Positions 33,030 through 54,598 of a stretch of DNA of 64,000 nt are shown in pieces. The stretch's first letter is position 1. Every line of letters starts with the position of its first letter. A model generated the notes under the pieces. It did no database searches, had not been told where the DNA came from, and worked only from the letters and a program-made list of their open reading frames with translations. The translations under genes were made by a program, and so were the position numbers. The stretch covers positions 1 to 64,000 of IMG/VR virus record IMGVR_UViG_3300046507_000667; one strand, 5' to 3'.

Positions 33030-33899
33030 ATGGCATTATTTTTAGAATCAGCCCATGCTCCAGTAGCAGATTCTGTTGTTAGTGGTATGTCAATGACTGA
33101 AGCCACTCTTGGTCTAATTGAAATGGCTCAAGAATTTGATTCACTAACAGTTCAAACTTTCTCTGAAGACTTCATGCTACATGAAGAAGCTAAAGAAGAA
33201 GGTAAAATGGACAAATTCAAGGCTAAGTCCAAAGAATTTGTTTCAAAGACTGCATTTAAGCTTAAGCAGTGGATGCAAAAGATTGGTGATTTCATTATCC
33301 ATTTCTGGAATGCATTTAAGCGTAAGTGTGCTGGCCTAGCTGTTCGTGTTGCACTATTCCGTAAGAAAATGGCAGTTCCAAAGCGTGCTGAAGCTGGTCT
33401 TCATGCAATTATGGAAATTGCTAATGAAGGTATGTCGGCAGTTCGTAGCGTAATGAGCAAAGTTGGTACAGAAGGTTTCAATGATGCGGTTGCTTCAGTT
33501 GGTAAGCTCATTGAAAATGCTGGTAAGAAATTTGAATCAGTTGAAAAGGCTGGTGAAGGTACAACTGAAGTACCATTAGGTCCAGTTGCTTCAAAAGCTC
33601 TTCAAACAGCTATGAAGGCTTCAGAACTTTGCCAAGATATCGGTAAACAACTAAAGCGTCATGCCGATTCACTAAAAGCTGACAATGAAGCAGAAGTTGC
33701 ACATGCTCGTAAGGTTGCAGGTGATATGCATCATCTACAAGCTAAGGCTCAAGCTCTTCTAACTCCTTTAGCACCAAAGGTTCTACACTTTATTTCGATG
33801 GCTAAAGCTCAAGCTGAAGCTGCCGGTGTAGATACAAGCAAGTTTGATCAAGCTCATGCAGCAGTTAAGGGCATGGCTGGTGATCATGGTGAAGAGTAA
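33030..33899 (+). CDS. MALFL-family putative internal head protein
   Basis: N-terminal MALFLES and ~90-aa domain shared with 51904, 52874, 53780. Confidence 0.75.
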   Translation: MALFLESAHAPVADSVVSGMSMTEATLGLIEMAQEFDSLTVQTFSEDFMLHEEAKEEGKMDKFKAKSKEFVSKTAFKLKQWMQKIGDFIIHFWNAFKRKCAGLAVRVALFRKKMAVPKRAEAGLHAIMEIANEGMSAVRSVMSKVGTEGFNDAVASVGKLIENAGKKFESVEKAGEGTTEVPLGPVASKALQTAMKASELCQDIGKQLKRHADSLKADNEAEVAHARKVAGDMHHLQAKAQALLTPLAPKVLHFISMAKAQAEAAGVDTSKFDQAHAAVKGMAGDHGEE

Positions 33900-33927
33900 T
33901 CTTCATTAAGTATTAAGCATTAAAACT

Positions 33928-33956
33928 CCCTATACCTCTTTTTAAGGGGTATAGGG
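33928..33956. terminator. bidirectional terminator, CCCTATACC family
   Basis: CCCTATACC...GGTATAGGG between convergent genes. Confidence 0.85.
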
Positions 33957-33963
33957 GTTTTAT

Positions 33964-34830
33964 TTACTCGCCAATTTCTACATATTTATGGAAGTTATTG
34001 CAATAATATACACCTTCAGATTCTTCTACAACATCGACTTCTTCGCTAGTTACTTCACGAATGACATTGTATTGCTTATCTACGATGTAATATTGTTGAT
34101 CACCTTCAGCATAAAATAGAATTTCACCATCATCATCAACTTCTGAAGTTTCTAGTTCTTCTTCAATTTTAGGCTCTTCCACTATAGGTTGTGGAGTTTT
34201 TCTATGATCCAGAAGAGTATTGTTGACCGGTTCTTTAGTTGCTTCATCTTTCTCAGCAGCTTCTAAACGAGCCAGCATTTTTTCTTCTGATTCTTCTTCA
34301 GTTTCACCAGCATCTCTTTGAATATTACCACCGATAGATGGTAAGCGGACATTAGACTGTAAGAGGAATTTAAGGATTTCTGCAGCAGGAATACCGCCAG
34401 CACCACTTCCGTTTGCTTTGTCCTTTTGAATTTGATTAACAATCTTAAATGCACGATCAAGACGTGACTCTTTAAGATCCTTACCATGCTTAAGAAGACT
34501 TAATTTTAAGTTCTTCATGCTGATAAGGTTTGTAATCTGAGTAGAAATATACATGGGAGAAACCTTTTTAGGTTCTGCAGTTCCCATGCGTCTAGGAGTA
34601 CTAGGCTCATTACCTTCTTGAGCATCCATCAAAGCCATAGTATGTTTACTAGTTCTTTGATAGAGTTGATCAATTTCGGCAATTTCTTTGTTGAGTTGTG
34701 ATTCAACTTCAGCAAAGTCATTATTAGAGAGAATTTCTGTTAAATTACTTAAAGCAATACCAGCAAGAGAATCGTCGTTATCTTGTTGCGAGTTTTCTTC
34801 TTCTGGCGCATCGTGGTCTGTATGGGCCAT
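33964..34830 (-). CDS. hypothetical acidic coiled-coil protein
   Basis: 288 aa under a late-type promoter. Confidence 0.8.
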   Translation of the reverse strand: MAHTDHDAPEEENSQQDNDDSLAGIALSNLTEILSNNDFAEVESQLNKEIAEIDQLYQRTSKHTMALMDAQEGNEPSTPRRMGTAEPKKVSPMYISTQITNLISMKNLKLSLLKHGKDLKESRLDRAFKIVNQIQKDKANGSGAGGIPAAEILKFLLQSNVRLPSIGGNIQRDAGETEEESEEKMLARLEAAEKDEATKEPVNNTLLDHRKTPQPIVEEPKIEEELETSEVDDDGEILFYAEGDQQYYIVDKQYNVIREVTSEEVDVVEESEGVYYCNNFHKYVEIGE

Positions 34831-34857
34831 TTTTATGTACCTGCAAAATTCTTGAAC

Positions 34858-34900
34858 TATAAGGATGTTCTTTTTGATTCTTATTTTACAAATATATTAT
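34858..34900. promoter_or_regulatory. divergent promoters: late-type (-, 34869-34858) and early-type (+, 34890-34900)
   Basis: AACA TCCTTA TA on -, AAATATATTAT on +. Confidence 0.65.
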
Positions 34901-34955
34901 TATATTGCCATAGAAATATGGTGCTTTTATTCTTATCATTCAAATAAGAGAAATC

Positions 34956-35468
34956 ATGCAGAACACTATTCAAAAACCAATGGATGCAGAAACTTATATG
35001 GCTCGCTGCTTTCTATTTGGAGAGTATAATAAACAGAACTGCGAAAGTAGCTATGAAAAATTAACAGACTTCCAGCTACTTGATATGTTTGATAAAGATC
35101 CAGTATTACTATTTATTGAGACTCTTCGTGGTCCACAAATAAAAGAAAATGGTATTCTATCAGAGAAAGATTGTATTCGTCCTGATTTAGAGAATATCTT
35201 TATGCATGGTGCCTGTGGTCGCTTTGCAATGACACTGTTGTTACTATTTCCAAAAGGAAAGATTGCAAAGCTAAACGACAGTCATCATATTGTATTCTTA
35301 CATTGTGATATTGATGGTACACAATGGGTTTATGACATTCGTGGTCGGCACAAAAGAGATGCGCTTGGTTCGTTCACTATTCTGGATTTAACTCATAAGA
35401 AACATCTCGATCTTATATCAGAATATACAGATAATTACTCAAGTGAGCTTCACGGACCAATTGTATAA
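34956..35468 (+). CDS. hypothetical protein with Cys-His-Asp (papain/transglutaminase-like) pattern
   Basis: FMHGACGRFA, SHHIVF, VYDIRG. Confidence 0.55.
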   Translation: MQNTIQKPMDAETYMARCFLFGEYNKQNCESSYEKLTDFQLLDMFDKDPVLLFIETLRGPQIKENGILSEKDCIRPDLENIFMHGACGRFAMTLLLLFPKGKIAKLNDSHHIVFLHCDIDGTQWVYDIRGRHKRDALGSFTILDLTHKKHLDLISEYTDNYSSELHGPIV

Positions 35469-35480
35469 GGAAAGGATCGA

Positions 35481-36894
35481 ATGTCAGAAACAGTAAAACA
35501 ACTCCTTTTTGCACAAGCAGTAACTAATCACTTCAATGGTAAGACTAAATCTTTCATTGTAGAAAAAGTTAAAAATAAGACTACAGGTAAAGTTAAGAAA
35601 CGTGTAATCTTTGATGAAAATCCAGACTTTCACTTTTATAAGACTAAGAAAGGTCATGAACTGGATTATGCTGCAAAATGTATTCCAGTCGAGAAAGTTG
35701 AACGTATTGACTGTAAGTATAATCAGTTATTTGAACTAATTGCTAAGATTACTCATAAAGAAGAAGAATATGAGCAAATCATTAGTGAGAATAAGCGTTA
35801 TAAGCTAGCAGGTCTTCATAATGATTATAATATCCATCAGTCAGATGTAGTCTTAGATGACTATCTCATGATGAAATGGGCAAGAGAAAATAAAGATGTA
35901 ACTGAACCAATTGCACTTCATAAGGCATATTTCGATATTGAGGTGGATATCATCAATTATGATGGTTTTCCACAACCAGAAGAAGCGCCTTGTGAAGTTA
36001 ACTTTATTTCATATCTAAGTGATAAGAATCTTATTCTAAATTCATATATTCTCTATAATCGTGAGAATACTAGTATGCGTGAATTCCTACGCAAAGCTAA
36101 AATGGATAAAGAAACTAATTCACTAGATACTGCTTTAGGTAATGAATGGGCATTAAAGGTACTGGAAGAGCATTTCACAGAACCAAATCCTAAGTCAAAA
36201 TCATCAAAGCCACTAAAGGGTCTATGTGTACGAGTCTTTACAAGTGAGCAGGAATTAATCAAAGCTTTCTTTGATGATGTTCATGAAGACAAACCTGATT
36301 TCTTAGGCGGATGGAATAGTCACTTCGATATTCAGACTATTAAATCTAGGCTTGAAAATCATTTAGATGAAAAAGCAGTCAATTTCTTTTGCCCTTCAGA
36401 CTTTCCATTTAAGAAAGTGGATATTCGAAAAGATGAGCATGCTATTGACGTGTCAGATAGAGCGCATGAATTCTCTATCTCAGGCTACACTATCTTCTGT
36501 GACTTATTGTATTACTATGCTTCAATTCGAAAGACTAGTAAGGGTAAGAAAGAATCATGGAAGTTAGGTGATATTCTTCTTGAAGAACTAGGTGAATCTA
36601 AGTTCGAATATGAAGGTTCGATTAAAGATGCAGCATACATGAATTATGAGGCATTCTTAATCTACTCACAGATTGACTCATATCGTCTATATCAGCTTGA
36701 AGAAAAGAATGGCGACGTTGACCTTCTATATGGTATGTCATTGCTTACACATACCCGAATTGAAAAGGTTATGCGTAAGACGATTTCACTGAAGAACCTA
36801 GCAACAACAATGCTATTTGATAATGGTTATGCACTATGTAATAACCATAATAAGTTTATCAAGACCGGAGAGAAGAAGAAATTCCGGGGAGCAT
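35481..36894 (+). CDS. family B DNA polymerase, 3'-5' exonuclease/motif-A subunit, exon 1
   Basis: YFDIEV (ExoI), GWNSHFDI (ExoII), YSQIDS (ExoIII); joins exon 2 as FRGAFVANP; 574 aa spliced. Confidence 0.9.
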
Positions 36895-37678
36895 TAACCA
36901 TAAGTGCTCTTTAAATATACTTAATTGCTGGAAAACCCTCTGCTAAAGGGCAACTAGCAGCTATTTGATCTGCCAAGGTCACACAGAAAAGGTACTACAT
37001 GAAAGAGATCATTTTTAATGATTGGTTGAAATCATTTCTTGATTATGAAATTGATTTCAATGCAGTTAAACCAACACTCATCCGTTTATATGAGGGTGAT
37101 AAATCCTTTGAAGATTTTACAATCTCATATAGTATGAAAAAGGGAGTAATTCCTAATTTCACTATTCGAGAGGATGAATTAAATGGTGTAAAGGGTATTG
37201 TTTTACAAAAAGCAAATCGCCGATCTACTCGACATGTATTTTTACAAGATTTACCGTATAAAGTACGTGCTGTGGAATATAATAAGAAAAGTATGCTATG
37301 GCGTCTTGATCTTTATTATAAAAAAGAATTGTATTACTATCCTAGTGGTGAACGTCGTTATGATCATCGACTTCATTTAGATGGTATCAATGATAATGAT
37401 GAATATTGCTTTTCATATATTCCAAAGCAGTATGAAGCATTTAGTATTATGAAAGGATTTATCGATCCATTGATTATTGATAAACCTAGAGAGAAAGGTC
37501 CAGCTCAAATCAAAAAGAAAGCAGATCAAAAATTCACGAAACGACCCTTGGCGATTAAGTAGTTCAACGACTATTATGTACATCTCAAGTGAGATGGAAA
37601 CAGTATACTCTGATGATATAGTCTGATCTTATGTGAAAGCATAAGTAGGTAGATTAACGACCTACCGACAACACGATG
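36895..37678 (+). mobile_element. group I self-splicing intron (784 nt) in DNA polymerase subunit gene
   Basis: AATTGCTGGAAA, CTAGCAG, GTTCAACGACTA, GATATAGTCT; IGS GTGCTCT pairs exon GGAGCAT; P10 CCATAA pairs TTGTGG; terminal G at 37678. Confidence 0.93.
36999..37562 (+). CDS. intron-encoded protein of unknown function (no clear homing-endonuclease motif)
   Basis: intact 187-aa ORF with AAAGG SD located between intron Q and R elements. Confidence 0.75.
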   Translation: MKEIIFNDWLKSFLDYEIDFNAVKPTLIRLYEGDKSFEDFTISYSMKKGVIPNFTIREDELNGVKGIVLQKANRRSTRHVFLQDLPYKVRAVEYNKKSMLWRLDLYYKKELYYYPSGERRYDHRLHLDGINDNDEYCFSYIPKQYEAFSIMKGFIDPLIIDKPREKGPAQIKKKADQKFTKRPLAIK

Positions 37679-37989
37679 TTGTGGCAAACCCTAACCTGAT
37701 TGCAAAGGTTGGAATTGAGGTTAATGGTTCTAAAACTCATAATATTTTTGAAAATGTAATTGACGAAGACTTGGCTTCACTATATCCGTCTATTATTCTT
37801 TCATCTAATATTGACTCTGAAACTATGATCGGCAAGATCTTAGCTGAAGATGATGATGAGTATTTAGGGCTCTTCGGTGAAATGATTGCTGAAGCTGATT
37901 TAGTATCTATTGGTAATCATTTTCTAAATCTACCATCTTTTGAAGATGTTGTAGAAAATATTGGCGATTTCCTTCTGGAAGAAGCATAA
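37679..37989 (+). CDS. DNA polymerase exonuclease/motif-A subunit, exon 2
   Basis: DEDLASLYPSIILSSNI = PolB motif A. Confidence 0.9.
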
Positions 37990-38321
37990 TGTATAATAGT
38001 AAAGGTAAAGTAGAGATTTCTCAGAATAATAGAGTTATTGTAGAATCTGATGGTAAGACAGTAACTGTAGTAGAACCATTTAAATTCCCTGATCTCTCAA
38101 AACCTCTCGAAAAACCAAGAGATAGAAAAAGCAATTATACTAATCGTGTAGTAACTATGCGACCAGTAACTCCAGTAGATGCTAGACATGGCACTGATGC
38201 AGAAATCCAGATTGGTACTCTTCGAGTAGGTCTGTCTGGAAAGGAGTTTATGGACGTATTAACTACTATGCAGAGACATCTTGCAGATAATCCAGAATTA
38301 CTAATTCTAGCAAAGAAATAA
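37989..38321 (+). CDS. hypothetical protein
   Basis: 110 aa, TAATG coupling. Confidence 0.75.
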   Translation: MYNSKGKVEISQNNRVIVESDGKTVTVVEPFKFPDLSKPLEKPRDRKSNYTNRVVTMRPVTPVDARHGTDAEIQIGTLRVGLSGKEFMDVLTTMQRHLADNPELLILAKK

Positions 38322-38386
38322 CGATTAAATAGGTGATACAAGAATAAATCTTGTATCACCTTCTATTTTTCTTATCGAGTGAAAAA

Positions 38387-38737
38387 ATGGATCTGATTAA
38401 ACGGAATTTTATTGATCTGCCGCCTTGCAAGAATACAATGGTTGAATTACCAGATAATCATCCACTTCGTCTAGCTGTAAAGAAGCTTGCTCTTAATGGT
38501 AAGACGATGACCTTTTATCCTGAACTACCAGAAGTTGAGAAAATTGTATTTGCTATCTTTTGGGATGGCTCTTGTGGTATTGTAAAGTATACAGGTGCTT
38601 GGACATATAAATTAGTATCTGGTGGCTATATCAATAAAATGCCTATTGCTTGGTGCAAAGCCACAGAGACCAGTAAGTTCACCGAGAAGCAGCTTGAGTT
38701 CGTTTATCAATTGAAGAACTTATATCAAGACAGATAG
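38387..38737 (+). CDS. hypothetical protein
   Basis: ATG 38387. Confidence 0.7.
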   Translation: MDLIKRNFIDLPPCKNTMVELPDNHPLRLAVKKLALNGKTMTFYPELPEVEKIVFAIFWDGSCGIVKYTGAWTYKLVSGGYINKMPIAWCKATETSKFTEKQLEFVYQLKNLYQDR

Positions 38738-38763
38738 GCTTAATTTTAAATGGAATTTGAAAC

Positions 38764-38910
38764 ATGTCAACACAAGTTAATGCTGAAGAAAACGGTCTAA
38801 ACGAAACTGAATTAGACGCACTCTTTGATCAATTTTGGGCTGTAGAAGGTCCAAAGGTATCAGATGCTTTAGATAAGTTCTTTGCAGAAACTCGTAAAGA
38901 GGTTCAATAA
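38764..38910 (+). CDS. small acidic protein (48 aa, MSTQVNAEENGLNETELDALFDQFW...)
   Basis: TAATG coupling to next gene; not in ORF track. Confidence 0.65.
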   Translation: MSTQVNAEENGLNETELDALFDQFWAVEGPKVSDALDKFFAETRKEVQ

Positions 38911-39128
38911 TGGCTTGTGGACTTTGTGGTTGTGAAGGCATTCATGCTTGTATCGGTCATAAACCTGCTCCAATGACAGAAGAACAAAAAACTGCTTTAG
39001 ATAGATTATTTAGAAATTTTGATCAAGATCAGCAGATGATTGAAGAATTAACTGTTGAACAACTTACAGCTATTAAAAAGGCATCGGGCATAGATCAAAG
39101 TAATGTAAATAATATTGATCCTTTTTGA
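38910..39128 (+). CDS. small protein with N-terminal Cys/His cluster
   Basis: MACGLCGCEGIHACIGH. Confidence 0.7.
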   Translation: MACGLCGCEGIHACIGHKPAPMTEEQKTALDRLFRNFDQDQQMIEELTVEQLTAIKKASGIDQSNVNNIDPF

Positions 39129-39140
39129 AATAAATATTAC

Positions 39141-39151
39141 AAATATATTAT
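39141..39151 (+). promoter_or_regulatory. early-type promoter AAATATATTAT
   Basis: exact motif upstream of 39199. Confidence 0.65.
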
Positions 39152-39198
39152 TAACTTGATACACTTGTATCTTAACTTCTAATAGATGTGGGAGCTTC

Positions 39199-39927: not shown

Positions 39928-39985
39928 AAGAACTATCAGCCTTAAATTCACATCTCTTATCCTAACTAAATAAAGGAAGCCTATC

Positions 39986-41855: not shown

Positions 41856-43244
41856 ATGAATTTAGATGTGTTAAATATTGACGACTTTATTAAGGTTAAT
41901 GGGATTAAGCAAGTATCTTCACCATTTATCTTTGCTGCAGATAAAACACCTGATCCAGAAGGTATCTTCTCATATGATATTTTTGGTCGAGTTGGTTCTG
42001 TAGCTCGTAAAGTCAATTATGGTTATGTGGATCTTAAACGAGAGTTTATTCATCCATTCGTATACAATATCTTGCAATCAGTTTATCGTAATCTTCCTCT
42101 GATTATTTCAGGTGATAAATACGTTAAACTTGGTCCAGATGGTACCATTCTCAATGCTAAGGACGATGATCCTGAAGGTCAGACAGGTATTGACTTTATT
42201 ATTGATAATTGGGAAAAGATTTCTTGGGAATCAAAATCTTCTACAGCTAGTCGTGAAAAGAAGTTAGCTATTCTTAGTGATTTTTCACGCAGTGAAATCT
42301 TCGTTACTAAGTGGCTAATTATTCCTGCAATGTATCGTGATATTAATTTACATTCACAAGATACAGGCAAGATTAGTATGGATGAAGTTAATTCATTTTA
42401 TAATAAGTTAATTAATCTTACAAATTCTGAATCAATTACTTTTGCTTCAAGTACTAATACTCAGTCTGCAGTGCAGATGAATCTAGTAGATATTCATAAC
42501 TATTTAACAAAGAAACTTTCAGGTAAGCGTGGTGTTATTCGTCAAGCTGTTATGGGTAAGACTATTGACCATGCAGCAACAAACGTTATTTCTGCACCAA
42601 GGTTCAATGATGAACACTATAAGAATCAGCTAGTACCTTATAACTATATTGGAATTCCATTGTATGTTATTTGTGCTACATTCTATCCATATTTCTTAAA
42701 ATGGATGGAAGATTATTTTTATGGTATTGAACAAAATGCTGAATTCGTATTCGGTGGTCAAGTATATGACTCCAGTATGGCCGCTAATGTAGTCAATTCA
42801 GAATCTATCCGTAAATTGATTACTGCTTACGTTAAAGATAAGACAAAACGTATTCGTACTGCACCATTTTCACTTAATAAGACAAATAGAAAGCTACAGT
42901 TCCGTGATGCTATTATTAATTTCCGTGACTATACTCTAACTGATCTTTTATTTGAAGCTGCAGAGCAAATTGTTAGTAATAAGTTAGTCCTTAGTACTCG
43001 TTATCCTGTTACTGGTTCAGAATCTATTATTATGAACAAAGTACGGATTTTAACTACAGAAGAAACTATTGATATGACACCAAGGCTTCGTACCCTTAGT
43101 GAATCAGCTAAGTTTCAATATAGTAAGTATCCAAGCTTCCCATATGATAGTACTGGCGCGGTTATTGCAGATCATGTACGTTGGATTGATTCCCTAGTAC
43201 CAAATAACTCCTTCCTAGCTGGTATGGGTGGTGACTATGACGGT
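41856..43244 (+). CDS. rpoC: phage RNA polymerase beta' subunit, N-terminal/catalytic part, exon 1
   Basis: PDPEGIFSYDIFG, GKRGVIRQAVMGK, RYP; ends GGDYDG; 515 aa spliced. Confidence 0.92.
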
Positions 43245-43290
43245 AGTTTTGCAATAAATTTATAGATTGTGCTAAAATGGGTGGTGATTA

Positions 43291-45926: not shown

Positions 45927-47435
45927 ATGCCAATTGGATCGATTCAAAGTGCATTGGTTTCAGCATTCCAAGACGAAAATCCTGAAACTTTTAATGAAGA
46001 CCTCATCTATATGCGCCATAAAGAACGCGCATCATTGCATGACTACTTCAAAGATGTATTTGCATCACTGAAGCTTCAAGGTATTACATATCTTGAAAGT
46101 CGCACTATTACTGATGAATCTGAATTCGAGAAGTATGTACCAAAGCGTACAAAGGCAATTGAAGAAAATCGGATGGACTTGATTGAAGCTAAGTTCCTCC
46201 TTGAATTTGAAGGTGAAAAGAAGGAAACATCAATCCATCTTTTCTTCCCTAAGCTAGTAGATGATTTCTTCTTTTATATCAATGGTAATCGCTACTTTGC
46301 TATTTATCAGATTTCAGATCGTAACTTTTATTCAACTCGTACAGGTCTCTTCCTTAAGACTCTATTGATGCCTTTGGGTCTTCAGTTTAGGAAGTCTGAA
46401 TTTGAGACTCTTGAAGGTACTCATTATGAAGGTAAAGAATATGTGCTAGACTTCTTCAAGACAAAGTTCCAAAACTTTGATGCATTGAAGAATATGTTCT
46501 ATTACTTCTTCATTAAGTTTGGAGTAACAGAAGCAATTGATATGATCTTTGAAAATACTGAAGATTTTACCAAGGTAGCATTGGTAGATGATGCAGATGA
46601 AATTGAAGGTTATGAAACAATTGAACTCCGTAAAGATCTATTCATCAAGTTCTATAGCAATCCAGGACAGAATGAGCAGAACTATATTAATCTGGTTGCA
46701 ACACTAGTAGCTGCTCTTAAAGGTATTCGTAAGACATCTATTACAGATAATGAAGACTATTGGAAGCGTAAGATCCTTAATAGCCCTACAGCAAAGCTTA
46801 CTAAAGCTGACAAAGCACTTATTAGTCTTGAACGTGTTCTTGATGAACGCACTAAGCGGAATCTTAAGGAAGTTACTGATCCAGCATACAAGCAAGATGT
46901 ATATGGCTTGATTCGTTGGATGACTTATAACTTTGAGAATCTTTATAATATTGATACAGTCGATATCTACAATCGTCGTCTGCGTCTATATGAATACATG
47001 CTGTATCCTCTGCTAATTAAGTTTTCAGATGCATCATATCGTATTCTTAATAGTCGTAACCTTGATTTGAAACGTTTAGAAACGGTATTTTCTAATATCG
47101 GCCCTATGTTCATCATTAAACGTTTGATTACTAACGAACTTTTCCGTTATAATAATGCTACGTCAAGTCTTGAACTATTCAGTGCGGCACTTCGTTGGAG
47201 TTCAAGAGGTTCTCAGTCTCTTGGTTCGTCTGGTGGTAGTATTACCATCAAGTATCGTGCTGTCCATCCTTCTTACCTTGGTGTCGTTAGCCTTAATGCA
47301 GCAAGTGCATCAGATCCTGGGATGACAGGTACTTTGGTACCAATGTCAAAGAATGTTGATACCATGTTCTTTGAACCAGATGCTCCTCAAGATATTTATA
47401 GCCATTCAGTAGATGCGATGTTGGGAGTTGAGTAA
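45927..47435 (+). CDS. rpoB: phage RNA polymerase beta subunit, N-terminal part
   Basis: FFYINGNRYFAIYQI, YRAVHPSYLGVVSLNAASASDPGMTG (beta fork-loop region). Confidence 0.88.
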   Translation: MPIGSIQSALVSAFQDENPETFNEDLIYMRHKERASLHDYFKDVFASLKLQGITYLESRTITDESEFEKYVPKRTKAIEENRMDLIEAKFLLEFEGEKKETSIHLFFPKLVDDFFFYINGNRYFAIYQISDRNFYSTRTGLFLKTLLMPLGLQFRKSEFETLEGTHYEGKEYVLDFFKTKFQNFDALKNMFYYFFIKFGVTEAIDMIFENTEDFTKVALVDDADEIEGYETIELRKDLFIKFYSNPGQNEQNYINLVATLVAALKGIRKTSITDNEDYWKRKILNSPTAKLTKADKALISLERVLDERTKRNLKEVTDPAYKQDVYGLIRWMTYNFENLYNIDTVDIYNRRLRLYEYMLYPLLIKFSDASYRILNSRNLDLKRLETVFSNIGPMFIIKRLITNELFRYNNATSSLELFSAALRWSSRGSQSLGSSGGSITIKYRAVHPSYLGVVSLNAASASDPGMTGTLVPMSKNVDTMFFEPDAPQDIYSHSVDAMLGVE

Positions 47436-47591: not shown

Positions 47592-48629
47592 ATGAATGAC
47601 GATGTATTAGCTATCTCTAATGGTCTAAAAATTAAATACCTTGAGATGAATAAGCTAATGGAGGATTGTACATTTTCAGAAGGAATTGAAACCATCGATA
47701 TCTATATCGACTCTAATCAATTCTTTGCATTCATGCGTCAAGAGCATACTAAGGCTGTTGCAGATAAACTGATTAAAAGTAAAGACTCAGTATCTCCAGC
47801 TATTGCTTTCTTTAATCTCTGTGGACATTATCGAAACTACTTTAAGACTGTTGGAGTAAGTACTCGATTCTTTCTTATTCATTCTGTTGGTGATACTATC
47901 AAATCAGGTATCTATTCAGATTGGAATAAGGAAATCACTGAAGGTTATACTGATCTAAAAGGTAAGAATTACGTTGATTTTGTAGTACTAAAACGTATTC
48001 GTCCAATGGCTGAATTTCTTAATGATGTATATGTCATTAATTCAGTTGATGTATGTCATACTACATTTCCTTTCATTCTAAATGAAAAGAAAGAAAATAG
48101 AGCCACATTTATTTTATCTAATGATAAACGTTTTCTTCAATATACTTATCTATTAGATAAATGTGCTGTTATGCGTCCTTCAGCAAAGAACTATCGACTA
48201 GTAGAAGCAAGTGATATATTCAACTATATTCAAGATAAATTGAAGAATCAAGTTGAACTTACTTGTCATTATCTAATTCCATATCTAATGCTTGTAGGAA
48301 ATAAGAGTATTGATCCAATGGATGATAGTGTAAAGACTGCTAGTAAAGCTGTAAAGTATCTTGCTAATGGCCCTAAGATCGAATGGGATACTTATGATAA
48401 TCCGGAACTTCTCCGAGAAATCATGGGTAGCTTTGTAGATGAAGAAGATGATATCCCAAATACTTTAACTTTATTTGATGTACCTACTTTGGTGCAGAAA
48501 GTTGAGTTTTTAGATGCTTGGAAGACTCATATTCGGAATCAAGTTCAATCTACTCCATCAAAGAAATCAGCATTCGAGCTAAATGCCGAATTCTTTGAAG
48601 ATGAAATCAACTTGTCCATGCTCTATTGA
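47592..48629 (+). CDS. 5'-3' exonuclease/FEN (PIN)-fold protein, possibly inactive
   Basis: IYIDSN, YRNYF, FILSNDKRFLQY pattern; several expected acidic residues absent. Confidence 0.5.
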   Translation: MNDDVLAISNGLKIKYLEMNKLMEDCTFSEGIETIDIYIDSNQFFAFMRQEHTKAVADKLIKSKDSVSPAIAFFNLCGHYRNYFKTVGVSTRFFLIHSVGDTIKSGIYSDWNKEITEGYTDLKGKNYVDFVVLKRIRPMAEFLNDVYVINSVDVCHTTFPFILNEKKENRATFILSNDKRFLQYTYLLDKCAVMRPSAKNYRLVEASDIFNYIQDKLKNQVELTCHYLIPYLMLVGNKSIDPMDDSVKTASKAVKYLANGPKIEWDTYDNPELLREIMGSFVDEEDDIPNTLTLFDVPTLVQKVEFLDAWKTHIRNQVQSTPSKKSAFELNAEFFEDEINLSMLY

Positions 48630-48634
48630 TATAG

Positions 48635-48692
48635 AACAATGGGTTAGTTAAAAATTCAAATGTCCTAAAGATCCTTATTGGGTCTTTAGGAC
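48635..48692 (+). promoter_or_regulatory. late-type promoter (48635-48646) followed by leader hairpin (48662-48692)
   Basis: AACA ATGGGT TA; GTCCTAAAGATCC...GGGTCTTTAGGAC. Confidence 0.6.
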
Positions 48693-48720
48693 TACTCTTT
48701 ACTCTTCTTTTTTTTTGATT

Positions 48721-51700
48721 ATGGATAATATTGCAGCCGATTTAAGCCTTAATAGTTATCCGGGTGCCGATTATACTATTCCTCCTACATCAGGTAAGCA
48801 GGATCGTAAATCAGCAAATCTTAGTGCAGCTGATCAAGATAAGCTAAAGTCATTATTAGATCAAACTAATAAGGCATATGCTACTTGGCAGTCATGGATT
48901 CCTACATATCAGTTTAGTATTAAAGAAACCACTCGCTTAATGAGTGGTAATACTACTTTACAGAATGCACAAGCTCAAGCAGAAAACGATATTCAAGTAG
49001 CTAAACTTGATAAAGCTATTACAGTTGCTACGCGTCTTAATAGTGAGATGCAAAAAATATGTGATCCGAATGATTTGTACTCGGTTAATGTAGAATTTGG
49101 TGACTATTCAGATATCTATCCTTATAATAGTCATTTTAAAGAATATTTAGAAACTATTAAAGCTATTCAGCCACAAGTAGCAAATATTAAGAATAGCGCT
49201 CAACCAGTAGCTAAAGAAACTACTATTGCTGCAGCTACTGATAATGGTAATCCAAACGCTCCAGATATCACTGTGGCTACTGTAAAATCTGTAACTATTC
49301 CGATTCATCCATTTGAAAAGATCATGTATCAGATTTCAATGAATATGATCATGCCCGGAGCTACAGATATTCAGATTGATCAGTATATTCAGGATATGCT
49401 TTATTCTATTGATTTTGATAAGCATGCAATGCCTATTTTATCAGTAGGTATGAGAGTACCATACGCAGTTATTGCTTCAATTAAAGATCACTTTGAGAAT
49501 ATTACTTGGAGGTGGTCTGTTAGTAAGATTGCTAAAATATCAGATAAGAAAGAAGTCCAAGATTTTGCAATTCCCGAAGTTATCTTTGATAATGTGGAAC
49601 TAACAGCAATCGATCCTGATTTCAATGCAGTTAATCTTAATAAAGATACGGCAAGTAGACCAGAAGGTGCAATACCTACATATCCATTAAAGATTGACTT
49701 CATTATGAAGAAAGACAATCTTGCTAGTTCACATCAAATGGCAAGAATCTTTAATAATGTACGTATGATGGATATTCTTACTTTCTTATGTAATGCACTT
49801 AAGAAAGATAATCCTGATCTAAGTTTCACTATTACTCCACCTGATAATCAAAAGGTATATGAGCAAGTAATAATGGAACCATCTACATTTACACAAGCTA
49901 TTAATAACTTACAAGATCGATATGGGTTATATCGTTCTGGAGTTAGAGTATCACTTAGTTCAAATACTCAAGTAAGTGCAAATCCAGATACACAAGTAGC
50001 TAACTCTACTAGTGATGTACCAGAAAAGAAAGTAACGAAAAGTTACGTTACTATTACTGATAAAACTGGTACTGCACCAGCTACAGGTGCATTTTCTAAT
50101 GTACTTATTGAGATAGTAGATACTCGTAATACTGATAATCTTGGATATGAAAGTGGTTCATGGCTTGATAAAGATTCAAAGACATTAGTAGTTAGATCCA
50201 GTAAGCCATATTCTATCAATAAGAATAATTCAGAACGTTTGAGTAATGGTGAGAATATGCGTGTTCTCCATAATAGCTCAAATTTTCATGCTCGTTCTGT
50301 TTGTGATGCAGTAACTAATGTAGTTGGTTCACAACGTCTGTATAAGCATCCATATGATAATGAGTATGCTTTATCACAAGTACAAACAGCAGTACACGAA
50401 AAGACTCTACAAGTAGGTATTGAAGTAGCTGATATTGATATCTTTACATTTTCAGATAATCTTAATTATTATCTAAAATTCTATTCAGCAGATGATACTA
50501 CTGCATCAGGTACTTATCGTATTACTAATGCTCAATTTTTACTTCGTGATGGTAATTCTGGACCTAAGAATGCTATAGAGACTTCAGGTAAGTTTATCTT
50601 TACAGATATTCCACCTCTTAAGCAAGATGGTAAAGTAATTGAACGTCCTACTTATGAAGCACGAGTAAATACAGCTATTAAAGAAACTACTACAAATGCT
50701 AACTCTACTGGTACAGTACCTATGCCAACTACAGCAGTTGGTCTATTTGGTATTCCAGTGGCTCCTGCAGGTAATTCAGTTAGCAAAGCAATTGATTCAG
50801 CTAAATCTGGTATAAGTGGGGCATTAGCTACGGCTAAGGCTGCTACTACTGCAGTTAATAACACTATTACATCCGCTGTTAAGAATGTAGAAAATGCAGT
50901 ATCTGACACAGTTAATTCTGGTTTGGATCAAGTAAATAGTGGAGTTAACACTGTTAAAGCTTCTGTTGGTAGTACTTATGATAGTGCTTTAAGTAATATT
51001 AAAACTTCCGTTTCTCCTATTACTGAATCAGCATCAAAGGCTTTAGGTGATGGTAAAGATGTGATTGTTAAAGGTATGGGTGAGGCAGGTTTTAATGTTC
51101 CATCTACTGTACCTACATCAAACTTTCCAGTTCCAGCTGTACTAGGTGGAGTTGCTGCGGCAGCAGGAGTTACAACTATGATGAAGCTACGAGCATTAGT
51201 TCAGCCCAATAAAGTAGCAGCTACTTCAACAATTGCAGCAAGTACTAAGGTATACCAATTTAGACCTACATTTACTAATCGTAAAGATTATAATAATAAT
51301 GTAGTACCTGATACTATTGCTGATAACTATAATATGTCAGTACATATTCAATTTAAAGATGTATATGATTGTGTAACTGGTACTGATATTAATGCAGCAA
51401 ATGCAATGATGCAGAATTTTCCATCATTCATCTATGCTCAAAAGTTTTCAAATGAAATTCTTGATCCAATTATAGAGAAGTTTGGTAAATTCAACTATAG
51501 TAATGGTAAATTGCTTAGATTTTATAAGTATTCAGTTCCTGCACTAGATGGATTGGCCAGTCAATCATTAGTAGCTCTTTCAGCAGATTTTGTGCCTACT
51601 AGTGATATCGGTGATTCATTGTGTTCAGCATTACTCTGGATTGCTATTAATAGTGGATTAGACTTCGACCAATTGATTCTAGAAGGTGATGGAAATCAAT

Positions 51701-51864
51701 GGAAGTTTATTCACATTGGTAGACAGCTTAATGGAACTAATCGAAAGCAAGTTCTATTAATGCCTAATACTAGTGCAAATACTAACTTTTATCAGATTGA
51801 TCCTACAGTAATTGGTCATGAATCTCAGATCTATTACAAGAACTATAAATCTTTAATTAACTAA
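48721..51864 (+). CDS. large tail/baseplate-hub-like virion protein with C-terminal degenerate peptidase M15-like domain
   Basis: 1047 aa; Ala/Ser/Thr/Val low-complexity linker; ILDPIIEKFG...SQSLVALSADF...FDQLILE...FIHIG. Confidence 0.55.
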   Translation: MDNIAADLSLNSYPGADYTIPPTSGKQDRKSANLSAADQDKLKSLLDQTNKAYATWQSWIPTYQFSIKETTRLMSGNTTLQNAQAQAENDIQVAKLDKAITVATRLNSEMQKICDPNDLYSVNVEFGDYSDIYPYNSHFKEYLETIKAIQPQVANIKNSAQPVAKETTIAAATDNGNPNAPDITVATVKSVTIPIHPFEKIMYQISMNMIMPGATDIQIDQYIQDMLYSIDFDKHAMPILSVGMRVPYAVIASIKDHFENITWRWSVSKIAKISDKKEVQDFAIPEVIFDNVELTAIDPDFNAVNLNKDTASRPEGAIPTYPLKIDFIMKKDNLASSHQMARIFNNVRMMDILTFLCNALKKDNPDLSFTITPPDNQKVYEQVIMEPSTFTQAINNLQDRYGLYRSGVRVSLSSNTQVSANPDTQVANSTSDVPEKKVTKSYVTITDKTGTAPATGAFSNVLIEIVDTRNTDNLGYESGSWLDKDSKTLVVRSSKPYSINKNNSERLSNGENMRVLHNSSNFHARSVCDAVTNVVGSQRLYKHPYDNEYALSQVQTAVHEKTLQVGIEVADIDIFTFSDNLNYYLKFYSADDTTASGTYRITNAQFLLRDGNSGPKNAIETSGKFIFTDIPPLKQDGKVIERPTYEARVNTAIKETTTNANSTGTVPMPTTAVGLFGIPVAPAGNSVSKAIDSAKSGISGALATAKAATTAVNNTITSAVKNVENAVSDTVNSGLDQVNSGVNTVKASVGSTYDSALSNIKTSVSPITESASKALGDGKDVIVKGMGEAGFNVPSTVPTSNFPVPAVLGGVAAAAGVTTMMKLRALVQPNKVAATSTIAASTKVYQFRPTFTNRKDYNNNVVPDTIADNYNMSVHIQFKDVYDCVTGTDINAANAMMQNFPSFIYAQKFSNEILDPIIEKFGKFNYSNGKLLRFYKYSVPALDGLASQSLVALSADFVPTSDIGDSLCSALLWIAINSGLDFDQLILEGDGNQWKFIHIGRQLNGTNRKQVLLMPNTSANTNFYQIDPTVIGHESQIYYKNYKSLIN

Positions 51865-51867
51865 TAA

Positions 51868-51898
51868 TCCCCCTAACCCTCGAAAGAAGGTTAGGGGA
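51868..51898. terminator. bidirectional terminator, CCCTAACC family
   Basis: between convergent genes. Confidence 0.85.
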
Positions 51899-51903
51899 TT
51901 TTA

Positions 51904-52791
51904 TTAGGCCTTACGAATTTTAAGACCATTCATAAAGTCTTGGATTGCTCTTAATTCTAAATGAACAATCTTGACCATGAGACTATTGATATAAGCAATA
52001 TGATTAAGCTTGTCATGGATTGCGGCAATATCATGATGTGCTGTCGGATCATCTGCTTTAACCTTATCTACTTCAGCTTCAGTAGCTCCTACTCGATGAA
52101 CTAATGAGCCAAGCATTTGCTTATATTTGTCTTGATCACTCTTTAGATCACCAATGATACGTGCAAATAATTGCAGTGAAAATTTAACGGTACCATCAAT
52201 TTCTTTGGTCTCATCATAATCTGCAATAAGATGAGCATATTTCTTGCCCATATCATCAACTGTATCTTCTACAGACTTTTTCTTTTCAGCATAAGAAGTT
52301 ACTGGTACTTCATCTAATGCTGTAATTAGATCATTTAATTTAGGTACATTGTCTCTTGAGAATGGACGAATCTTCTCATAATTTTTGACAATACCTTTTT
52401 TACATTCTGCTTCAAGCAGTTCTTTTTCTAGCAATACTGATTCTTCTAAACTACCACCTGATTTCCAACGCTTTTCAACAATAAGCAGGTGAGCTAGAAT
52501 TCTAATCATTGTTACAATGATTGCATTCCATACACGCTTGAGAGTTTCGAGGAACTTTCGAATGAGACTCTTTACACTCTCAATAAATTTGGAAATTAGG
52601 CTGACTTTGGCTTCTTTCTGCTCATTCTCAGAAAGAATATTTGCTGATACGTGTAATTGGTAATCTTCATGTAGAACTGAAATCATACAGTCCGACATAC
52701 TCTGGGTGAATTCGCATAAACTTACTAATGCTTCTTCAAGAGTGACTACTTCTACTTGCATTTGTTGTTGATTTTCTAAAAATAGCGCCAT
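51904..52791 (-). CDS. MALFL-family putative internal head protein
   Basis: start corrected to ATG 52791 (MALFLENQ); the track's upstream extension crosses a terminator. Confidence 0.75.
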   Translation of the reverse strand: MALFLENQQQMQVEVVTLEEALVSLCEFTQSMSDCMISVLHEDYQLHVSANILSENEQKEAKVSLISKFIESVKSLIRKFLETLKRVWNAIIVTMIRILAHLLIVEKRWKSGGSLEESVLLEKELLEAECKKGIVKNYEKIRPFSRDNVPKLNDLITALDEVPVTSYAEKKKSVEDTVDDMGKKYAHLIADYDETKEIDGTVKFSLQLFARIIGDLKSDQDKYKQMLGSLVHRVGATEAEVDKVKADDPTAHHDIAAIHDKLNHIAYINSLMVKIVHLELRAIQDFMNGLKIRKA

Positions 52792-52814
52792 ATCTAACCC
52801 TTGAAAATAAAAAC

Positions 52815-52840
52815 CCCTAACCCTCGGTAGAAGGTTAGGG
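52815..52840 (-). terminator. terminator, CCCTAACC family
   Basis: CCCTAACC...GGTTAGGG. Confidence 0.75.
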
Positions 52841-52873
52841 AGTTCATCAAGCAATTAAGTAATTATTAATTAC

Positions 52874-53668
52874 TTATTCCTTCTTTTCTTCTGGTGTATT
52901 TGCTGCACCAGCTTGAACAGCTTGTGAAGCAAGACCAAATAGACGAGTAGCTGCTTGAGCTAGTGTTGAAACACCAGTCTTTTGTGCAACTAGCTTGCCA
53001 TGTTCTTCACCAGCTGACTTCTTGTCGTCTGCTGAAGACTTTTCATCGCTTTGAACCTTCTCAGCTTGAGCAATCATTGCATTGATTTGGGCTTCTGCAT
53101 TCTTTTGCTTAGCGATGACGATTGTCATTGCCTTTTGAATTGCGCCGAGTTCTGAAGCCTTAACTGCAACTGCTTCGCCACCTTGTGCGTCTGCTGCGGC
53201 TTCCTTATCGAAAGCTTCCTTAGCTTCTGCAACTGCCTTTGAATAAGCTTCTGCTGAAGCTGGCTTAGCTGAAACAGCCTTACCTAGCTTGTCAAATGCT
53301 TCTGAAGCCTTGTTTAGACGCTCTAGCTTTGCCTTGTTAACCTTGAGCTTGCCATTTGCGCCAGTGATCTTGGCCCAGAGAGCCTTGAAACGTGCGACAA
53401 CAGCGGCCCATACGCGCTTGATCATTTCCTTGAGCTTCTTGAACATTTCAACTAGCTTTGAACCAGCACGCTTTAGAAGACCAGCCTTCTTTTCTTCAGC
53501 AGCTTCTTCAGTTAGTGTCTTTGATTGCTCATGGATGATGAAGTCAGCACGGAGTACTGATTCATTAAATGCTGCGAACTCTTGTGTGAACTCTAGAAGG
53601 CCGAGAAGGGCTGTGTCTAGTGATACACGTGGAGCTACTTGGGTGCTTTCTTGTAGGAAAAGTGCCAT
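52874..53668 (-). CDS. MALFL-family putative internal head protein (Ala/Lys-rich, strongly biased codons)
   Basis: MALFLQES...FNESVLRADF..HE; own late promoter. Confidence 0.8.
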   Translation of the reverse strand: MALFLQESTQVAPRVSLDTALLGLLEFTQEFAAFNESVLRADFIIHEQSKTLTEEAAEEKKAGLLKRAGSKLVEMFKKLKEMIKRVWAAVVARFKALWAKITGANGKLKVNKAKLERLNKASEAFDKLGKAVSAKPASAEAYSKAVAEAKEAFDKEAAADAQGGEAVAVKASELGAIQKAMTIVIAKQKNAEAQINAMIAQAEKVQSDEKSSADDKKSAGEEHGKLVAQKTGVSTLAQAATRLFGLASQAVQAGAANTPEEKKE

Positions 53669-53729
53669 GATATGTAAAATCCTTATTTACAAAATTTAGA
53701 AAAATTTAATACGTGGCGGTATTGATGAC

Positions 53730-53741
53730 TAACTTTATGTT
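53730..53741 (-). promoter_or_regulatory. late-type promoter AACA-N6-TA
   Basis: AACA TAAAGT TA. Confidence 0.65.
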
Positions 53742-53779
53742 TATTAGTTGTCACTCATAACTCGAACGTTCTAACTACA

Positions 53780-54598
53780 TCAAGTTGCTGATTGATCCTT
53801 AGCTAGCCTAGCACTATTACAAATAACGCCAATTACAGGACCAATTGTAGACATTACGAACTGTATAATTTCTTGCTTATGAATTAATTCAGCATGAATA
53901 TTATCAAATCCACTAGGATCTCTTTCTAAAATGATGACATTGGCTTCTTTTTGAATAGTCTCAATCGAAGACTTAAAATGTTTATCAGTTTCAGTAAAGA
54001 AATCTAAAAGCTTCTTAATGAAATCACAGAAATTAGTATCTGCATATACAATACCTTCCTCATCATTTGCCTTTGTAAAGACATCTTTAAGGACTAAAGT
54101 AAGTCTACCAATTTCTTTTCTAGTATCAGTATGAATTTGGTCGTAATTATCTTTCTTAGATACAAAAGTCTTATCGACAAAAGTTGTCGCAGTATTTACA
54201 AGATTTTGAATAGCCTCAAAAATCTCTTTCCTATGAATATAAATACCCTTATCGACAACGGTACGACCTTTTCCTTCATGACTTGTAATCTTTTCATAAA
54301 CTGCCGTGATTTTCTGCTTAATCCAGTTATAGATTCTTAGAAGAAAATCTTTTAATTTCTGGTAAAGTTTCTTAATAGCTTCAAAAGCTTTATTAACAAT
54401 TCCTTTACTTTCATTAAGTACTGTATCTTCAGAAAGAAATGCTAACCTTTCATGGAGAGAAAAGTCAGCGCGCAATACTGATTCATTAATAGCATTGAAT
54501 TCAATATTGGCTTCTAGAAGATCCAGAAATACTTCATGTAATTCAAATACTTGTACTATTTGAGTATCATCTTGTCTGGTTTCTAGAAAAAGTGCCAT
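53780..54598 (-). CDS. MALFL-family putative internal head protein
   Basis: MALFLETR...INESVLRADFSLHE. Confidence 0.75.
   Translation of the reverse strand: MALFLETRQDDTQIVQVFELHEVFLDLLEANIEFNAINESVLRADFSLHERLAFLSEDTVLNESKGIVNKAFEAIKKLYQKLKDFLLRIYNWIKQKITAVYEKITSHEGKGRTVVDKGIYIHRKEIFEAIQNLVNTATTFVDKTFVSKKDNYDQIHTDTRKEIGRLTLVLKDVFTKANDEEGIVYADTNFCDFIKKLLDFFTETDKHFKSSIETIQKEANVIILERDPSGFDNIHAELIHKQEIIQFVMSTIGPVIGVICNSARLAKDQSAT

What the first reader, a model, noticed from the sequence alone, without database searches (positions are those of the whole stretch)
33030..54598. Paralogous late proteins share an N-terminal MALFL(Q)E tag, a possible capsid-targeting signal
Seen: four genes in two distant loci begin MALFLESA (33030), MALFLENQ (52791), MALFLQES (53668) and MALFLETR (54598), then share L.E...F....ES.L.aDF.LHE and a K-rich amphipathic helix before diverging; the 86-499 gene (MTIFL...LTE) may be a fifth. 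Established: T4 internal proteins share a short N-terminal capsid-targeting sequence removed at Glu, and phiKZ has paralogous head families. Inference: a conserved packaging/propeptide module delivering variable cargo domains into the head and possibly the host.
Basis: partly seen in the sequence, partly recalled or inferred. Interest (0 to 1): 0.6.

Follow-up and report, generated by a model that had tools for sequence, protein, structure and literature searches.

The report
Protease-processed internal head protein paralogs
Four paralogous genes of a phiR1-37-like jumbo phage encode basic helical head proteins that begin with an almost invariant MALFL tag on an acidic leader of about 55 residues. 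The phage's T4-type prohead protease most likely cuts that leader off, as in the known T4 and phiKZ way of loading proteins into a capsid.

Summary
Four ORFs (33030-33899 +, 51904-52791 -, 52874-53668 -, 53780-54598 -) start MALFL[E/Q] and share about 105 N-terminal residues (all six pairs, blastp E 1.6e-4 to 2.7e-18).

The window is part of a complete 249-kb phage distantly related to Yersinia phage phiR1-37. The phiR1-37 homologue g199 is annotated "structural protein sp24 precursor". Its mature N-terminus is at residue 56, directly after L-T-E, and that L-x-E column is about 97% conserved in the family.

The phage encodes a T4 gp21-type prohead protease (Peptidase_S77). A profile search found 109 protein clusters, nearly all 220-340 aa and nearly all starting MALFL-x-E. 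Each has six conserved hydrophobic-x-Glu sites in an acidic leader, followed by a basic helical bundle.

The C-terminal parts are one diverged fold, not variable cargo domains. Weak sequence and fold links lead to phiKZ internal head proteins (PF12699) and to phiKZ gp86.

An unrelated 180-aa protein elsewhere in the genome starts MAIFLES, and its bacterial homologues lack that leader. This hints that the tag is portable.

Verdict: a new member of a known kind, namely a CTS-like, protease-removed leader on internal head proteins. Processing is well supported by homology. The targeting role is inferred only.

The parts
33030..33899 (+). Paralogue 1, 289 aa, MALFLES start. The acidic leader probably ends at M-L-H-E52|E, because this copy lacks the L-[TS]-E column. 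The predicted mature part is 237 aa with pI 9.4.
51904..52791 (-). Paralogue 2, 295 aa from ATG 52791, MALFLEN start. The predicted leader is residues 1-55 (window 52627-52791) and ends I-L-S-E|N.
52874..53668 (-). Paralogue 3, 264 aa, MALFLQES start. By blastp against the phiR1-37 genome it resembles sp24 (g199) about as closely as the other copies do (E 2.2e-8; paralogue 2 gives 7.5e-8). The predicted leader is residues 1-54 (window 53507-53668) and ends T-L-T-E|E. The mature part is 210 aa, 22 kDa, pI 9.6. In the AF2 model (pLDDT 91) the site lies in the loop between helix 17-49 and helix 54-103.
53780..54598 (-). Paralogue 4, 272 aa, MALFLET start. The predicted leader is residues 1-57 (window 54428-54598) and ends F-L-S-E|D. 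It has seven hydrophobic-x-E motifs in the first 60 residues and an eighth at 61-63. The AF2 model (pLDDT 82) has the same topology as paralogue 3.
86..499 (-). Not a paralogue, but a possible carrier of a short related leader (MTIFLKLKKEVLTE|D, window 458-499). It is 137 aa. Its phiR1-37 orthologue g239 is a structural protein that starts MPFFLKE.
54600..56846 (-). Two upstream genes (369 and 373 aa) in the same orientation as paralogues 2-4. They occupy the position of phiR1-37 g210/g209 and AR9 g215/g216, which are all virion proteins. In AR9 a weak family member (g217) follows them, so the array is syntenic. The homology of the two genes themselves was not tested.

Best explanation
The four genes are paralogous internal head proteins of a phiR1-37-like jumbo phage.

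Each is made as a precursor with three parts:
- a flexible, nearly invariant N-terminal peptide, M-A-L-F-L-(x)-E;
- an acidic helical leader of about 55 residues that carries six conserved hydrophobic-x-Glu motifs;
- a basic helical bundle of about 210-240 residues.

Proposed mechanism:
1. During prohead assembly the leader, and above all its exposed MALFL end, holds the precursor in the prohead interior, on the shell or on the core. This corresponds to the T4 capsid-targeting sequence and to the capsid-binding N-terminal regions of phiKZ gp93 and gp162.
2. The T4 gp21-type prohead protease (genome 131399-132205) cuts after Glu at the hydrophobic-x-Glu sites. This dices the leader into peptides of 7-12 residues that can leave the shell.
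3. The basic mature protein stays in the head beside the DNA, as an internal (possibly ejected) protein or as an inner-surface protein.

What rests on what:
- Shown here: the paralogy, the family and its conservation pattern, the presence of the protease and the predicted fold.
- From homologue annotation: virion location and cleavage at residue 56.
- Inferred only: the targeting role of the tag, cleavage at the other five sites, and the fate of the mature protein.
For: (1) The homologue phiR1-37 g199 (HMM E 7e-16) starts MAMFLES. It is annotated 'structural protein sp24 precursor, mature N terminus ... 56', and residue 56 follows L-T-E. The mature part is calculated at 21.3 kDa, against reported 22 and 24 kDa bands.

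(2) phiR1-37 g275 also starts MAMFLES and is a structural protein. AR9 g096, a weak match in sequence and fold, is a 'virion protein'.

(3) A Peptidase_S77 / head maturation protease is present: E 1.6e-18 in Pfam and 1e-33 in PHROGs.

(4) The profile search gave 109 clusters. 75 start MALFL, 15 start M-x-hydrophobic-F-L, and nearly all matches begin at residue 1.

(5) In the 83-sequence alignment M1, F4 and L5 are invariant. A2, E36, D42, L52 and E54 are at least 90% conserved, and the other conserved positions form hydrophobic-x-E triplets.

(6) Among about 310 genes, only 7 have five or more such motifs in their first 60 residues. These are the four paralogues, the protease itself and two others.

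(7) F-L-E-S occurs four times in the proteome, each time within the first 35 residues: in paralogue 1, the protease, a virion structural protein and the MAIFLES protein. The Glu is invariant in 27 proteases and is conserved in both phiR1-37 orthologues.

(8) The leader is net negative and the mature part net positive in 83 of 83 members.

(9) In the AF2 models residues 1-16 are unstructured, and the L-x-E site sits in or next to the short break between helices 1 and 2.

(10) Precedents exist: the T4 CTS, the SPN3US gp53/gp54 N-termini, and the phiKZ gp93/gp162 N-terminal regions bound to the inner capsid surface.
Against: - There are no virion or cleavage data for this phage itself. The phiR1-37 annotation names Asp at position 56, but the translated residue is Glu, and the original paper could not be read.
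- Paralogue 1 lacks the conserved L-[TS]-E column.
- In most copies the MALFLE hexapeptide puts Phe, not Leu or Ile, at P3, so cleavage there is a guess.
- No partner for the tag is identified, and the complex prediction could not be run.
- AR9-type relatives appear to have the fold without the MALFL start, so the tag is not indispensable for the family as a whole.
- Membership in PF12699 is below threshold for the window's own proteins, and hhalign was negative.
Confidence: 0.7

Rival explanations
1. The proteins are processed head proteins, but MALFL is not a targeting signal. Either it is conserved only as the first protease site or for some other N-terminal requirement, and incorporation depends on the helical leader or on the mature bundle.
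For: The hexa- or heptapeptide ends in a hydrophobic-x-E motif like the five others. AR9 and Staphylococcus jumbo-phage relatives lack MALFL yet include virion proteins. In phiKZ the capsid-bound parts are long stretches (gp93 14-84, gp162 19-134), not the extreme N-terminus, which is cut off at residue 13 or 17.
Against: The other five sites conserve only hydrophobic-x-E with variable neighbours, whereas M-A-L-F-L is invariant or nearly so over more than 100 clusters below 50% identity. A non-homologous protein carries MAIFLES.
Confidence: 0.3
2. The mature proteins are inner-surface minor capsid (cement or vertex-complex) proteins like phiKZ gp86, not free internal or ejected proteins.
For: The closest phage head protein among solved chains for both models is 8y6v_G, which is phiKZ gp86. 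It gives the longest alignments in both lists: 194 residues at Z 9.6 and 196 residues at Z 7.8, covering the mature part only. gp86 is proteolytically processed and sits under the vertices. It also has a weak PF12699 match.
Against: These Z values lie in the range that helical bundles reach by chance, as the tool's own note says. The high pI and the varying paralogue number resemble T4 IPs and phiKZ inner-body proteins. The two roles are not exclusive: phiKZ gp93 and gp162 do both.
Confidence: 0.3
3. They are scaffolding (core) proteins that are fully degraded and leave the head.
For: They are helical, carry many protease motifs in the leader, and no gp22-like scaffold is annotated.
Against: Mature g199 (sp24) is a virion band in phiR1-37. 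The motif density is high only in the first ~60 residues. A better scaffold candidate exists at genome 89534-90139: acidic, 201 aa, nine motifs in its first 60 residues.
Confidence: 0.07
4. The shared start reflects a nucleotide-level element (translation initiation, promoter or leader) or recent gene conversion, not a peptide signal.
For: The codons after the ATG are AT-rich, and GCN as second codon favours expression (general knowledge).
Against: Synonymous differences occur at four of the five codons among the copies, and the upstream regions are unrelated. The peptide is conserved across 109 clusters below 50% identity.
Confidence: 0.03

Closest known systems
Yersinia phage phiR1-37 g199 (structural protein sp24 precursor), g275 and probably g197
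   Same: They belong to the same sequence family (HMM E 7e-16 and 1.9e-5; g197 3e-4 over the K-rich helix). g199 and g275 have the same MAMFLES start, the same L-x-E site and the same predicted fold. The top BFVD hits, of 259, 225 and 282 aa, match their lengths. All are annotated as virion proteins, and g199 has a mapped mature N-terminus.
   Different: The window phage has four tagged copies against two in phiR1-37. Three of them form a tandem array placed as in AR9, not as in phiR1-37. Identity is only about 25-38% over the N-terminal ~100 residues.
T4 internal proteins IPI/IPII/IPIII and Alt with their capsid-targeting sequence (CTS)
   Same: Diverged basic head proteins share a conserved extreme N-terminus that ends in hydrophobic-x-Glu and is removed by a gp21-type protease. 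An acidic leader sits on a basic cargo. In T4 the tag is portable to foreign proteins. Here an unrelated protein starts MAIFLES.
   Different: The T4 CTS is 10-20 residues, whereas this leader is about 55 residues with six sites. No sequence similarity to the T4 IPs was found. Targeting is untested here.
phiKZ_IP family PF12699 (phiKZ gp93/94/95/162/163; SPN3US gp53/gp54, 'paralogue family A')
   Same: These are paralogous helix-rich head proteins with N-terminal propeptides cut by the prohead protease. SPN3US gp53/gp54 have an identical 15-residue N-terminus at only 34% overall identity. The N-terminal regions of gp93 and gp162 bind the inner capsid surface. PF12699 is the top Pfam family for the MALFL family: 6 of 83 members, best E 1.5e-5. 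Foldseek finds many phiKZ-like 'internal head / virion structural' models at E 0.01-0.08.
   Different: The window's own proteins are far below the Pfam cut-off (10.8 against 27 bits). hhalign against the eight phiKZ paralogues is not significant. The proteins are shorter (about 270 against 370-550 aa) and so is the leader (55 against more than 100 residues). The preferred site is L/F-x-E rather than S/A/G-x-E.
phiKZ gp86 (PDB 8y6v chain G), inner-surface vertex-complex minor capsid protein
   Same: It is an elongated helical bundle and a product of prohead-protease cleavage. It gives the longest structural alignment to the mature part of both models.
   Different: Z of 7.8-9.6 is not above the background for helical bundles, identity is 8-11%, and no sequence-level match was found.

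Membership tests
MALFL / phiR1-37 sp24 (g199) family | Significant sequence match over the N-terminal ~105 residues, starting at residue 1 | tested here: met
   HMM of the four copies against phiR1-37 g199, E 7e-16. 109 clusters at E<=1e-3 in 1.84 billion proteins.
MALFL / phiR1-37 sp24 (g199) family | Conserved L-[TS]-E at the mapped maturation site | tested here: met
   Present in three of the four window copies. L is in 78 of 81 and E in 79 of 81 family members. Paralogue 1 lacks it.
MALFL / phiR1-37 sp24 (g199) family | Protein present in virions in a shortened form | not testable with these tools
   Known only from the annotation of the phiR1-37 homologue.
T4-type CTS-bearing internal proteins | A gp21-type (Peptidase_S77) prohead protease is encoded by the phage | tested here: met
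   PF03420 at 64 bits, over the cut-off. phrog_3014, E 1e-33.
T4-type CTS-bearing internal proteins | N-terminal leader ending in hydrophobic-x-Glu | tested here: met
   F-L-E6 or L-x-E7, plus five further conserved sites.
T4-type CTS-bearing internal proteins | Leader necessary and sufficient for encapsidation | not testable with these tools
   This needs fusion and deletion experiments.
T4-type CTS-bearing internal proteins | Sequence homology to T4 IPI/II/III or Alt | tested here: not met
   No Pfam or PHROG hit to such families.
phiKZ_IP (PF12699) | Pfam model above the gathering score | tested here: not met
   The window proteins give no hit at E<=0.1. The best in the genome scan is 10.8 bits in paralogue 4, against a cut-off of 27.
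phiKZ_IP (PF12699) | Remote homology at the family level | tested here: inconclusive
   6 of 83 family members hit PF12699, best E 1.5e-5, and it is the top family. hhalign against 8 phiKZ paralogues gives probability 22%. Foldseek on BFVD gives E 0.01-0.08 to phiKZ-like virion proteins.
Scaffolding protein | Absent from mature virions | tested here: not met
   The homologues g199, g275 and AR9 g096 are annotated as virion proteins.
Tail tape measure protein | Significant match to TMP families, and a length that fits a tail | tested here: not met
   There are only E 0.02-0.08 PHROG hits over the K-rich helix of one copy, and the proteins are only 264-295 aa.

The most novel reading that the evidence does not exclude
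M-A-[LIM]-F-L-(x)-E is a minimal, portable capsid-targeting tag of phiR1-37-type jumbo phages. The phage has grafted it onto a non-homologous, bacterial-type 180-aa protein (genome 199523-200065, MAIFLES...). The ~168-aa bacterial homologues of that protein lack any leader. Its closest homologues, at least one of them on a jumbo-phage-sized contig, carry other short leaders ending in hydrophobic-L-x-E. On this reading the phage packages an enzyme-like protein into the head, trims it and delivers it with the DNA. The tag could then be used to load foreign proteins into these capsids.
Probability: 0.3. Interest if true: 0.6.

Novelty: new member of a known kind. Interest (0 to 1): 0.45.

Why it matters
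How jumbo phages load dozens of proteins into their heads is still poorly understood. Those proteins include virion RNA polymerase and proteins ejected into the host.

This family gives the uracil-DNA phiR1-37/AR9 branch a clearly delimited candidate signal: five nearly invariant residues followed by a leader with regularly spaced protease sites. The family has more than 100 diverged natural variants.

It also links that branch to the T4 CTS and to the phiKZ inner-body and minor-capsid proteins.

If the tag is sufficient for packaging, it would be a short handle for loading proteins into these capsids, and a way to identify further packaged proteins from sequence alone.

Tried and rejected
- Megablast of 6 kb of the window and tblastn of paralogue 3 against 50,697 phage records gave nothing. 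The relative was found through a larger neighbouring protein.
- The search for related loci in IMG/VR with the four N-termini found no confirmed relative.
- PHROG and Pfam scans of the four proteins gave only weak hits of coiled-coil or low-complexity type (tape measure, Prominin and others), which I rejected.
- The phiR1-37 genome/proteome paper (Skurnik 2012) is not held, so sp24 processing rests on the GenBank note and on a supplementary table of a later paper.
- hhalign of the family against the eight phiKZ PF12699 paralogues was not significant.
- Foldseek against the PDB gave nothing at E<=0.001. Faint ClyA-type pore-former and flagellin rows (TM 0.15-0.3) were rejected as generic long-helix matches.
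- A profile search of PDB sequences gave only designed bundles, spike HR1 and similar compositional matches.
- One context look-up landed on a 1-kb contig and told nothing.
- One search was a mistaken reference and returned an error.
- The ATG at genome 161177 (MSIFLD) is an internal Met of a longer ORF, so it was dropped from the tag count.
Full report
**What is there.** The window is the first 64 kb of a complete 249,347-bp virus record with terminal repeats. Its GC content is about 34%. It encodes split DNA polymerase genes and multisubunit RNA polymerase beta-type subunits. An 859-aa protein is 49% identical to g207 of Yersinia phage phiR1-37 and about 30% identical to proteins of Bacillus phages AR9 and PBS1. 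The phage is therefore a distant relative of phiR1-37, in the jumbo-phage group that includes AR9, PBS1 and large Staphylococcus phages.

**The four genes.** For the second gene the ATG at 52791 is the likely start. The upstream TTG lies inside a terminator-like hairpin.
- All six pairs are significantly similar over the first ~100 residues (E 1.6e-4 to 2.7e-18). None is similar after residue 110.
- An HMM of the N-termini finds only these four in the genome.
- The five shared codons differ synonymously between copies, and the upstream DNA is unrelated. Selection therefore acts on the peptide.

**The decisive link.** The HMM hits phiR1-37 g199 at E 7e-16 and g275 at 1.9e-5. Both begin MAMFLES and both are annotated as structural proteins. 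g199 is annotated 'structural protein sp24 precursor; mature protein N terminus is Asp56'.
- In the translated sequence residue 56 is Glu, not Asp. It follows L53-T54-E55, a T4-type L-x-E site. I treat the position as reliable and the residue name as a slip, but I could not read the source paper.
- The calculated mature mass is 21.3 kDa.
- Three of the four window copies have L-[TS]-E in the same column. Paralogue 1 has only M-L-H-E a few residues earlier.

**The protease.** The genome encodes a Peptidase_S77 (T4 gp21-type) head maturation protease at 131399-132205. Its own N-terminus reads ..G-R-I-F-L-E-S.., and the Glu is invariant in 27 homologues.
- F-L-E-S occurs four times in the proteome, always within the first 35 residues. 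The carriers are paralogue 1, the protease, a 417-aa virion structural protein and a 180-aa protein that starts MAIFLES. In the virion protein the PHROG match begins exactly at that motif.
- The phiR1-37 orthologues of the protease and of the virion protein keep F-x-E-S at the same places.

**The family.** A profile search of 1.84 billion representative proteins returned 109 clusters at E<=1e-3, 49 of them at E<=1e-10. Nearly all are 220-340 aa and match from residue 1.
- 75 begin MALFL and 15 begin M-x-hydrophobic-F-L. Most of the rest look like gene-start miscalls.
- In an 83-sequence alignment M1, F4 and L5 are invariant, and A2, E36, D42, L52 and E54 are at least 90% conserved.
- The conserved positions of the leader form six hydrophobic-x-Glu triplets at about residues 5-7, 17-19, 24-26, 34-36, 45-47 and 52-54. 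Cleavage at all six would give peptides of 7-12 residues.
- Only 7 of about 310 genes in the genome have five or more such motifs in their first 60 residues (mean 1.4, sd 1.35). These are the four paralogues, the protease and two others.
- The leader is net negative and the mature part net positive in all 83 members.

**Fold.** AlphaFold2 with the family alignment gives confident models for paralogue 3 (pLDDT 91, pTM 0.86) and paralogue 4 (pLDDT 82, pTM 0.72).
- Both have the same order of elements: an unstructured start, a leader helix, a short break in or next to which the L-x-E site lies, a 50-residue basic helix, and then four or five more helices with two short strands.
- Both models find the same BFVD entries first. 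Three have the lengths of phiR1-37 g199, g275 and g197, and two are AR9 proteins (g096 'virion protein' and g217). Many phiKZ-like 'virion structural / internal head' proteins follow at E 0.01-0.08.
- The C-terminal parts are therefore diverged copies of one fold, not different cargo domains.
- AR9 g217 sits after two virion-protein genes, in the position the tandem array has in the window. These Gram-positive relatives lack the MALFL start.

**Relation to known families.**
- PF12699 (phiKZ_IP) is the Pfam family hit by the most members: 6 of 83, best E 1.5e-5. The window's own proteins are far below threshold, and hhalign against the eight phiKZ paralogues is not significant.
- Among solved chains, phiKZ gp86 (8y6v_G, identified) gives the longest alignment to the mature part of both models: 194 and 196 residues at Z 9.6 and 7.8. 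This lies within the background for helical bundles.
- The literature gives close functional precedents. The T4 CTS is 10-20 residues, is removed by gp21 and is portable.
- SPN3US gp53 and gp54 share an identical 15-residue N-terminus at 34% overall identity and carry long propeptides. The authors call this reminiscent of the T4 CTS.
- In phiKZ, the N-terminal regions of gp93 and gp162 lie between protease sites and stay bound to the inner capsid surface. Their helix-rich domains are cut off for the inner body.

**A hint that the tag is portable.** Right after an ATG, the pattern x-[LIMV]-F-L-[EQDK] occurs 8 times against 0.66 expected. One of the eight is an internal Met and was discarded. 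Besides the four paralogues the carriers are:
- the window gene 86-499 (MTIFLKLKKEVLTE..), whose phiR1-37 orthologue g239 is a structural protein starting MPFFLKE;
- a 109-aa protein at genome 111977 (MNIFLKL..);
- the 180-aa MAIFLES protein at 199523-200065.

The MAIFLES protein belongs to a widespread family without a Pfam model. Its bacterial members (~168 aa) begin directly with the conserved core. Its closest homologues carry 10-25-residue leaders ending in hydrophobic-L-x-E. One of them lies two genes from a Peptidase_S77 gene on a 222.6-kb contig. This is suggestive, not proof.

**Verdict.** The propeptide reading is well supported through a characterised homologue, the protease and the conservation pattern. 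The capsid-targeting role is a reasonable inference with strong precedents but no direct test. 'Variable cargo' is not supported. The phenomenon is known in T4 and in phiKZ-like phages, and the processing of one homologue is already annotated. I therefore file it as a new member of a known kind, with a well-defined family and tag that do not seem to have been described as such.

Noticed in passing
genome G000:C1:199523-200065 (-), locus L026 (outside the window): A 180-aa protein starts MAIFLESRSR. It belongs to a widespread family of bacteria, phages and giant viruses that has no Pfam model. Bacterial members (~168 aa) lack the leader. The closest homologues have other short leaders ending in hydrophobic-L-x-E, and one of them lies next to a Peptidase_S77 gene on a 222.6-kb contig. 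Function is unknown; the Atlas model has pTM 0.91.
   Followed up: partly
genome G000:C1:89534-90139 (-), next to 90191-91444 (-), locus L052: An acidic 201-aa protein has nine hydrophobic-x-Glu motifs in its first 60 residues, the highest count in the genome, and an Asp/Glu-rich C-terminus. It lies directly downstream of a 417-aa virion structural protein (phrog_3013) that has N-F-L-E-S at residues 31-35. It is conserved in phiR1-37 and is a candidate scaffold or core protein.
   Followed up: partly
genome G000:C1:111977-112306 (+), locus L028, and window 86-499 (-): Two otherwise unrelated small proteins share the start M-x-I-F-L-K-L (MNIFLKL and MTIFLKL). This may be chance or a second variant of the tag.
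   Followed up: no
phiR1-37 record NC_016163, g199 (locus L001:28074-28853): The GenBank note says the mature N-terminus is Asp56, but the translated residue 56 is Glu. The nearest Asp is residue 60.
   Followed up: partly
window 30288-32216 (-) and 35481-36914 (+): Two separate DNA polymerase pieces (phrog_2927/262 and phrog_3011/262) lie on opposite strands and flank paralogue 1 and its neighbours. This is a split polymerase, as reported for phiKZ-like phages.
   Followed up: no
window 6533-7978 (+), 41856-43265 (+), 45927-47435 (+): Several RNA polymerase beta-type subunit genes and a 'polymerase' gene are present. This is consistent with the virion and non-virion multisubunit RNA polymerases of this phage group.
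   Followed up: no
window 48715-51864 (+): A 1049-aa protein (phrog_20569, E 3e-117) has a weak tape-measure-like stretch at residues 677-779. It converges on the tandem MALFL array from the opposite strand.
   Followed up: no
window 52792-52873: A terminator-like GC hairpin followed by a T-run sits between paralogues 3 and 2. The TTG that extends the ORF of paralogue 2 to 52854 lies within it.
   Followed up: partly
locus L046 (222.6-kb JGI contig), 4737-5273: The jumbo-phage-sized contig that carries the leader-bearing homologue P0027 also encodes an Acb1 (anti-CBASS) family protein and two SLT-domain proteins.
   Followed up: no
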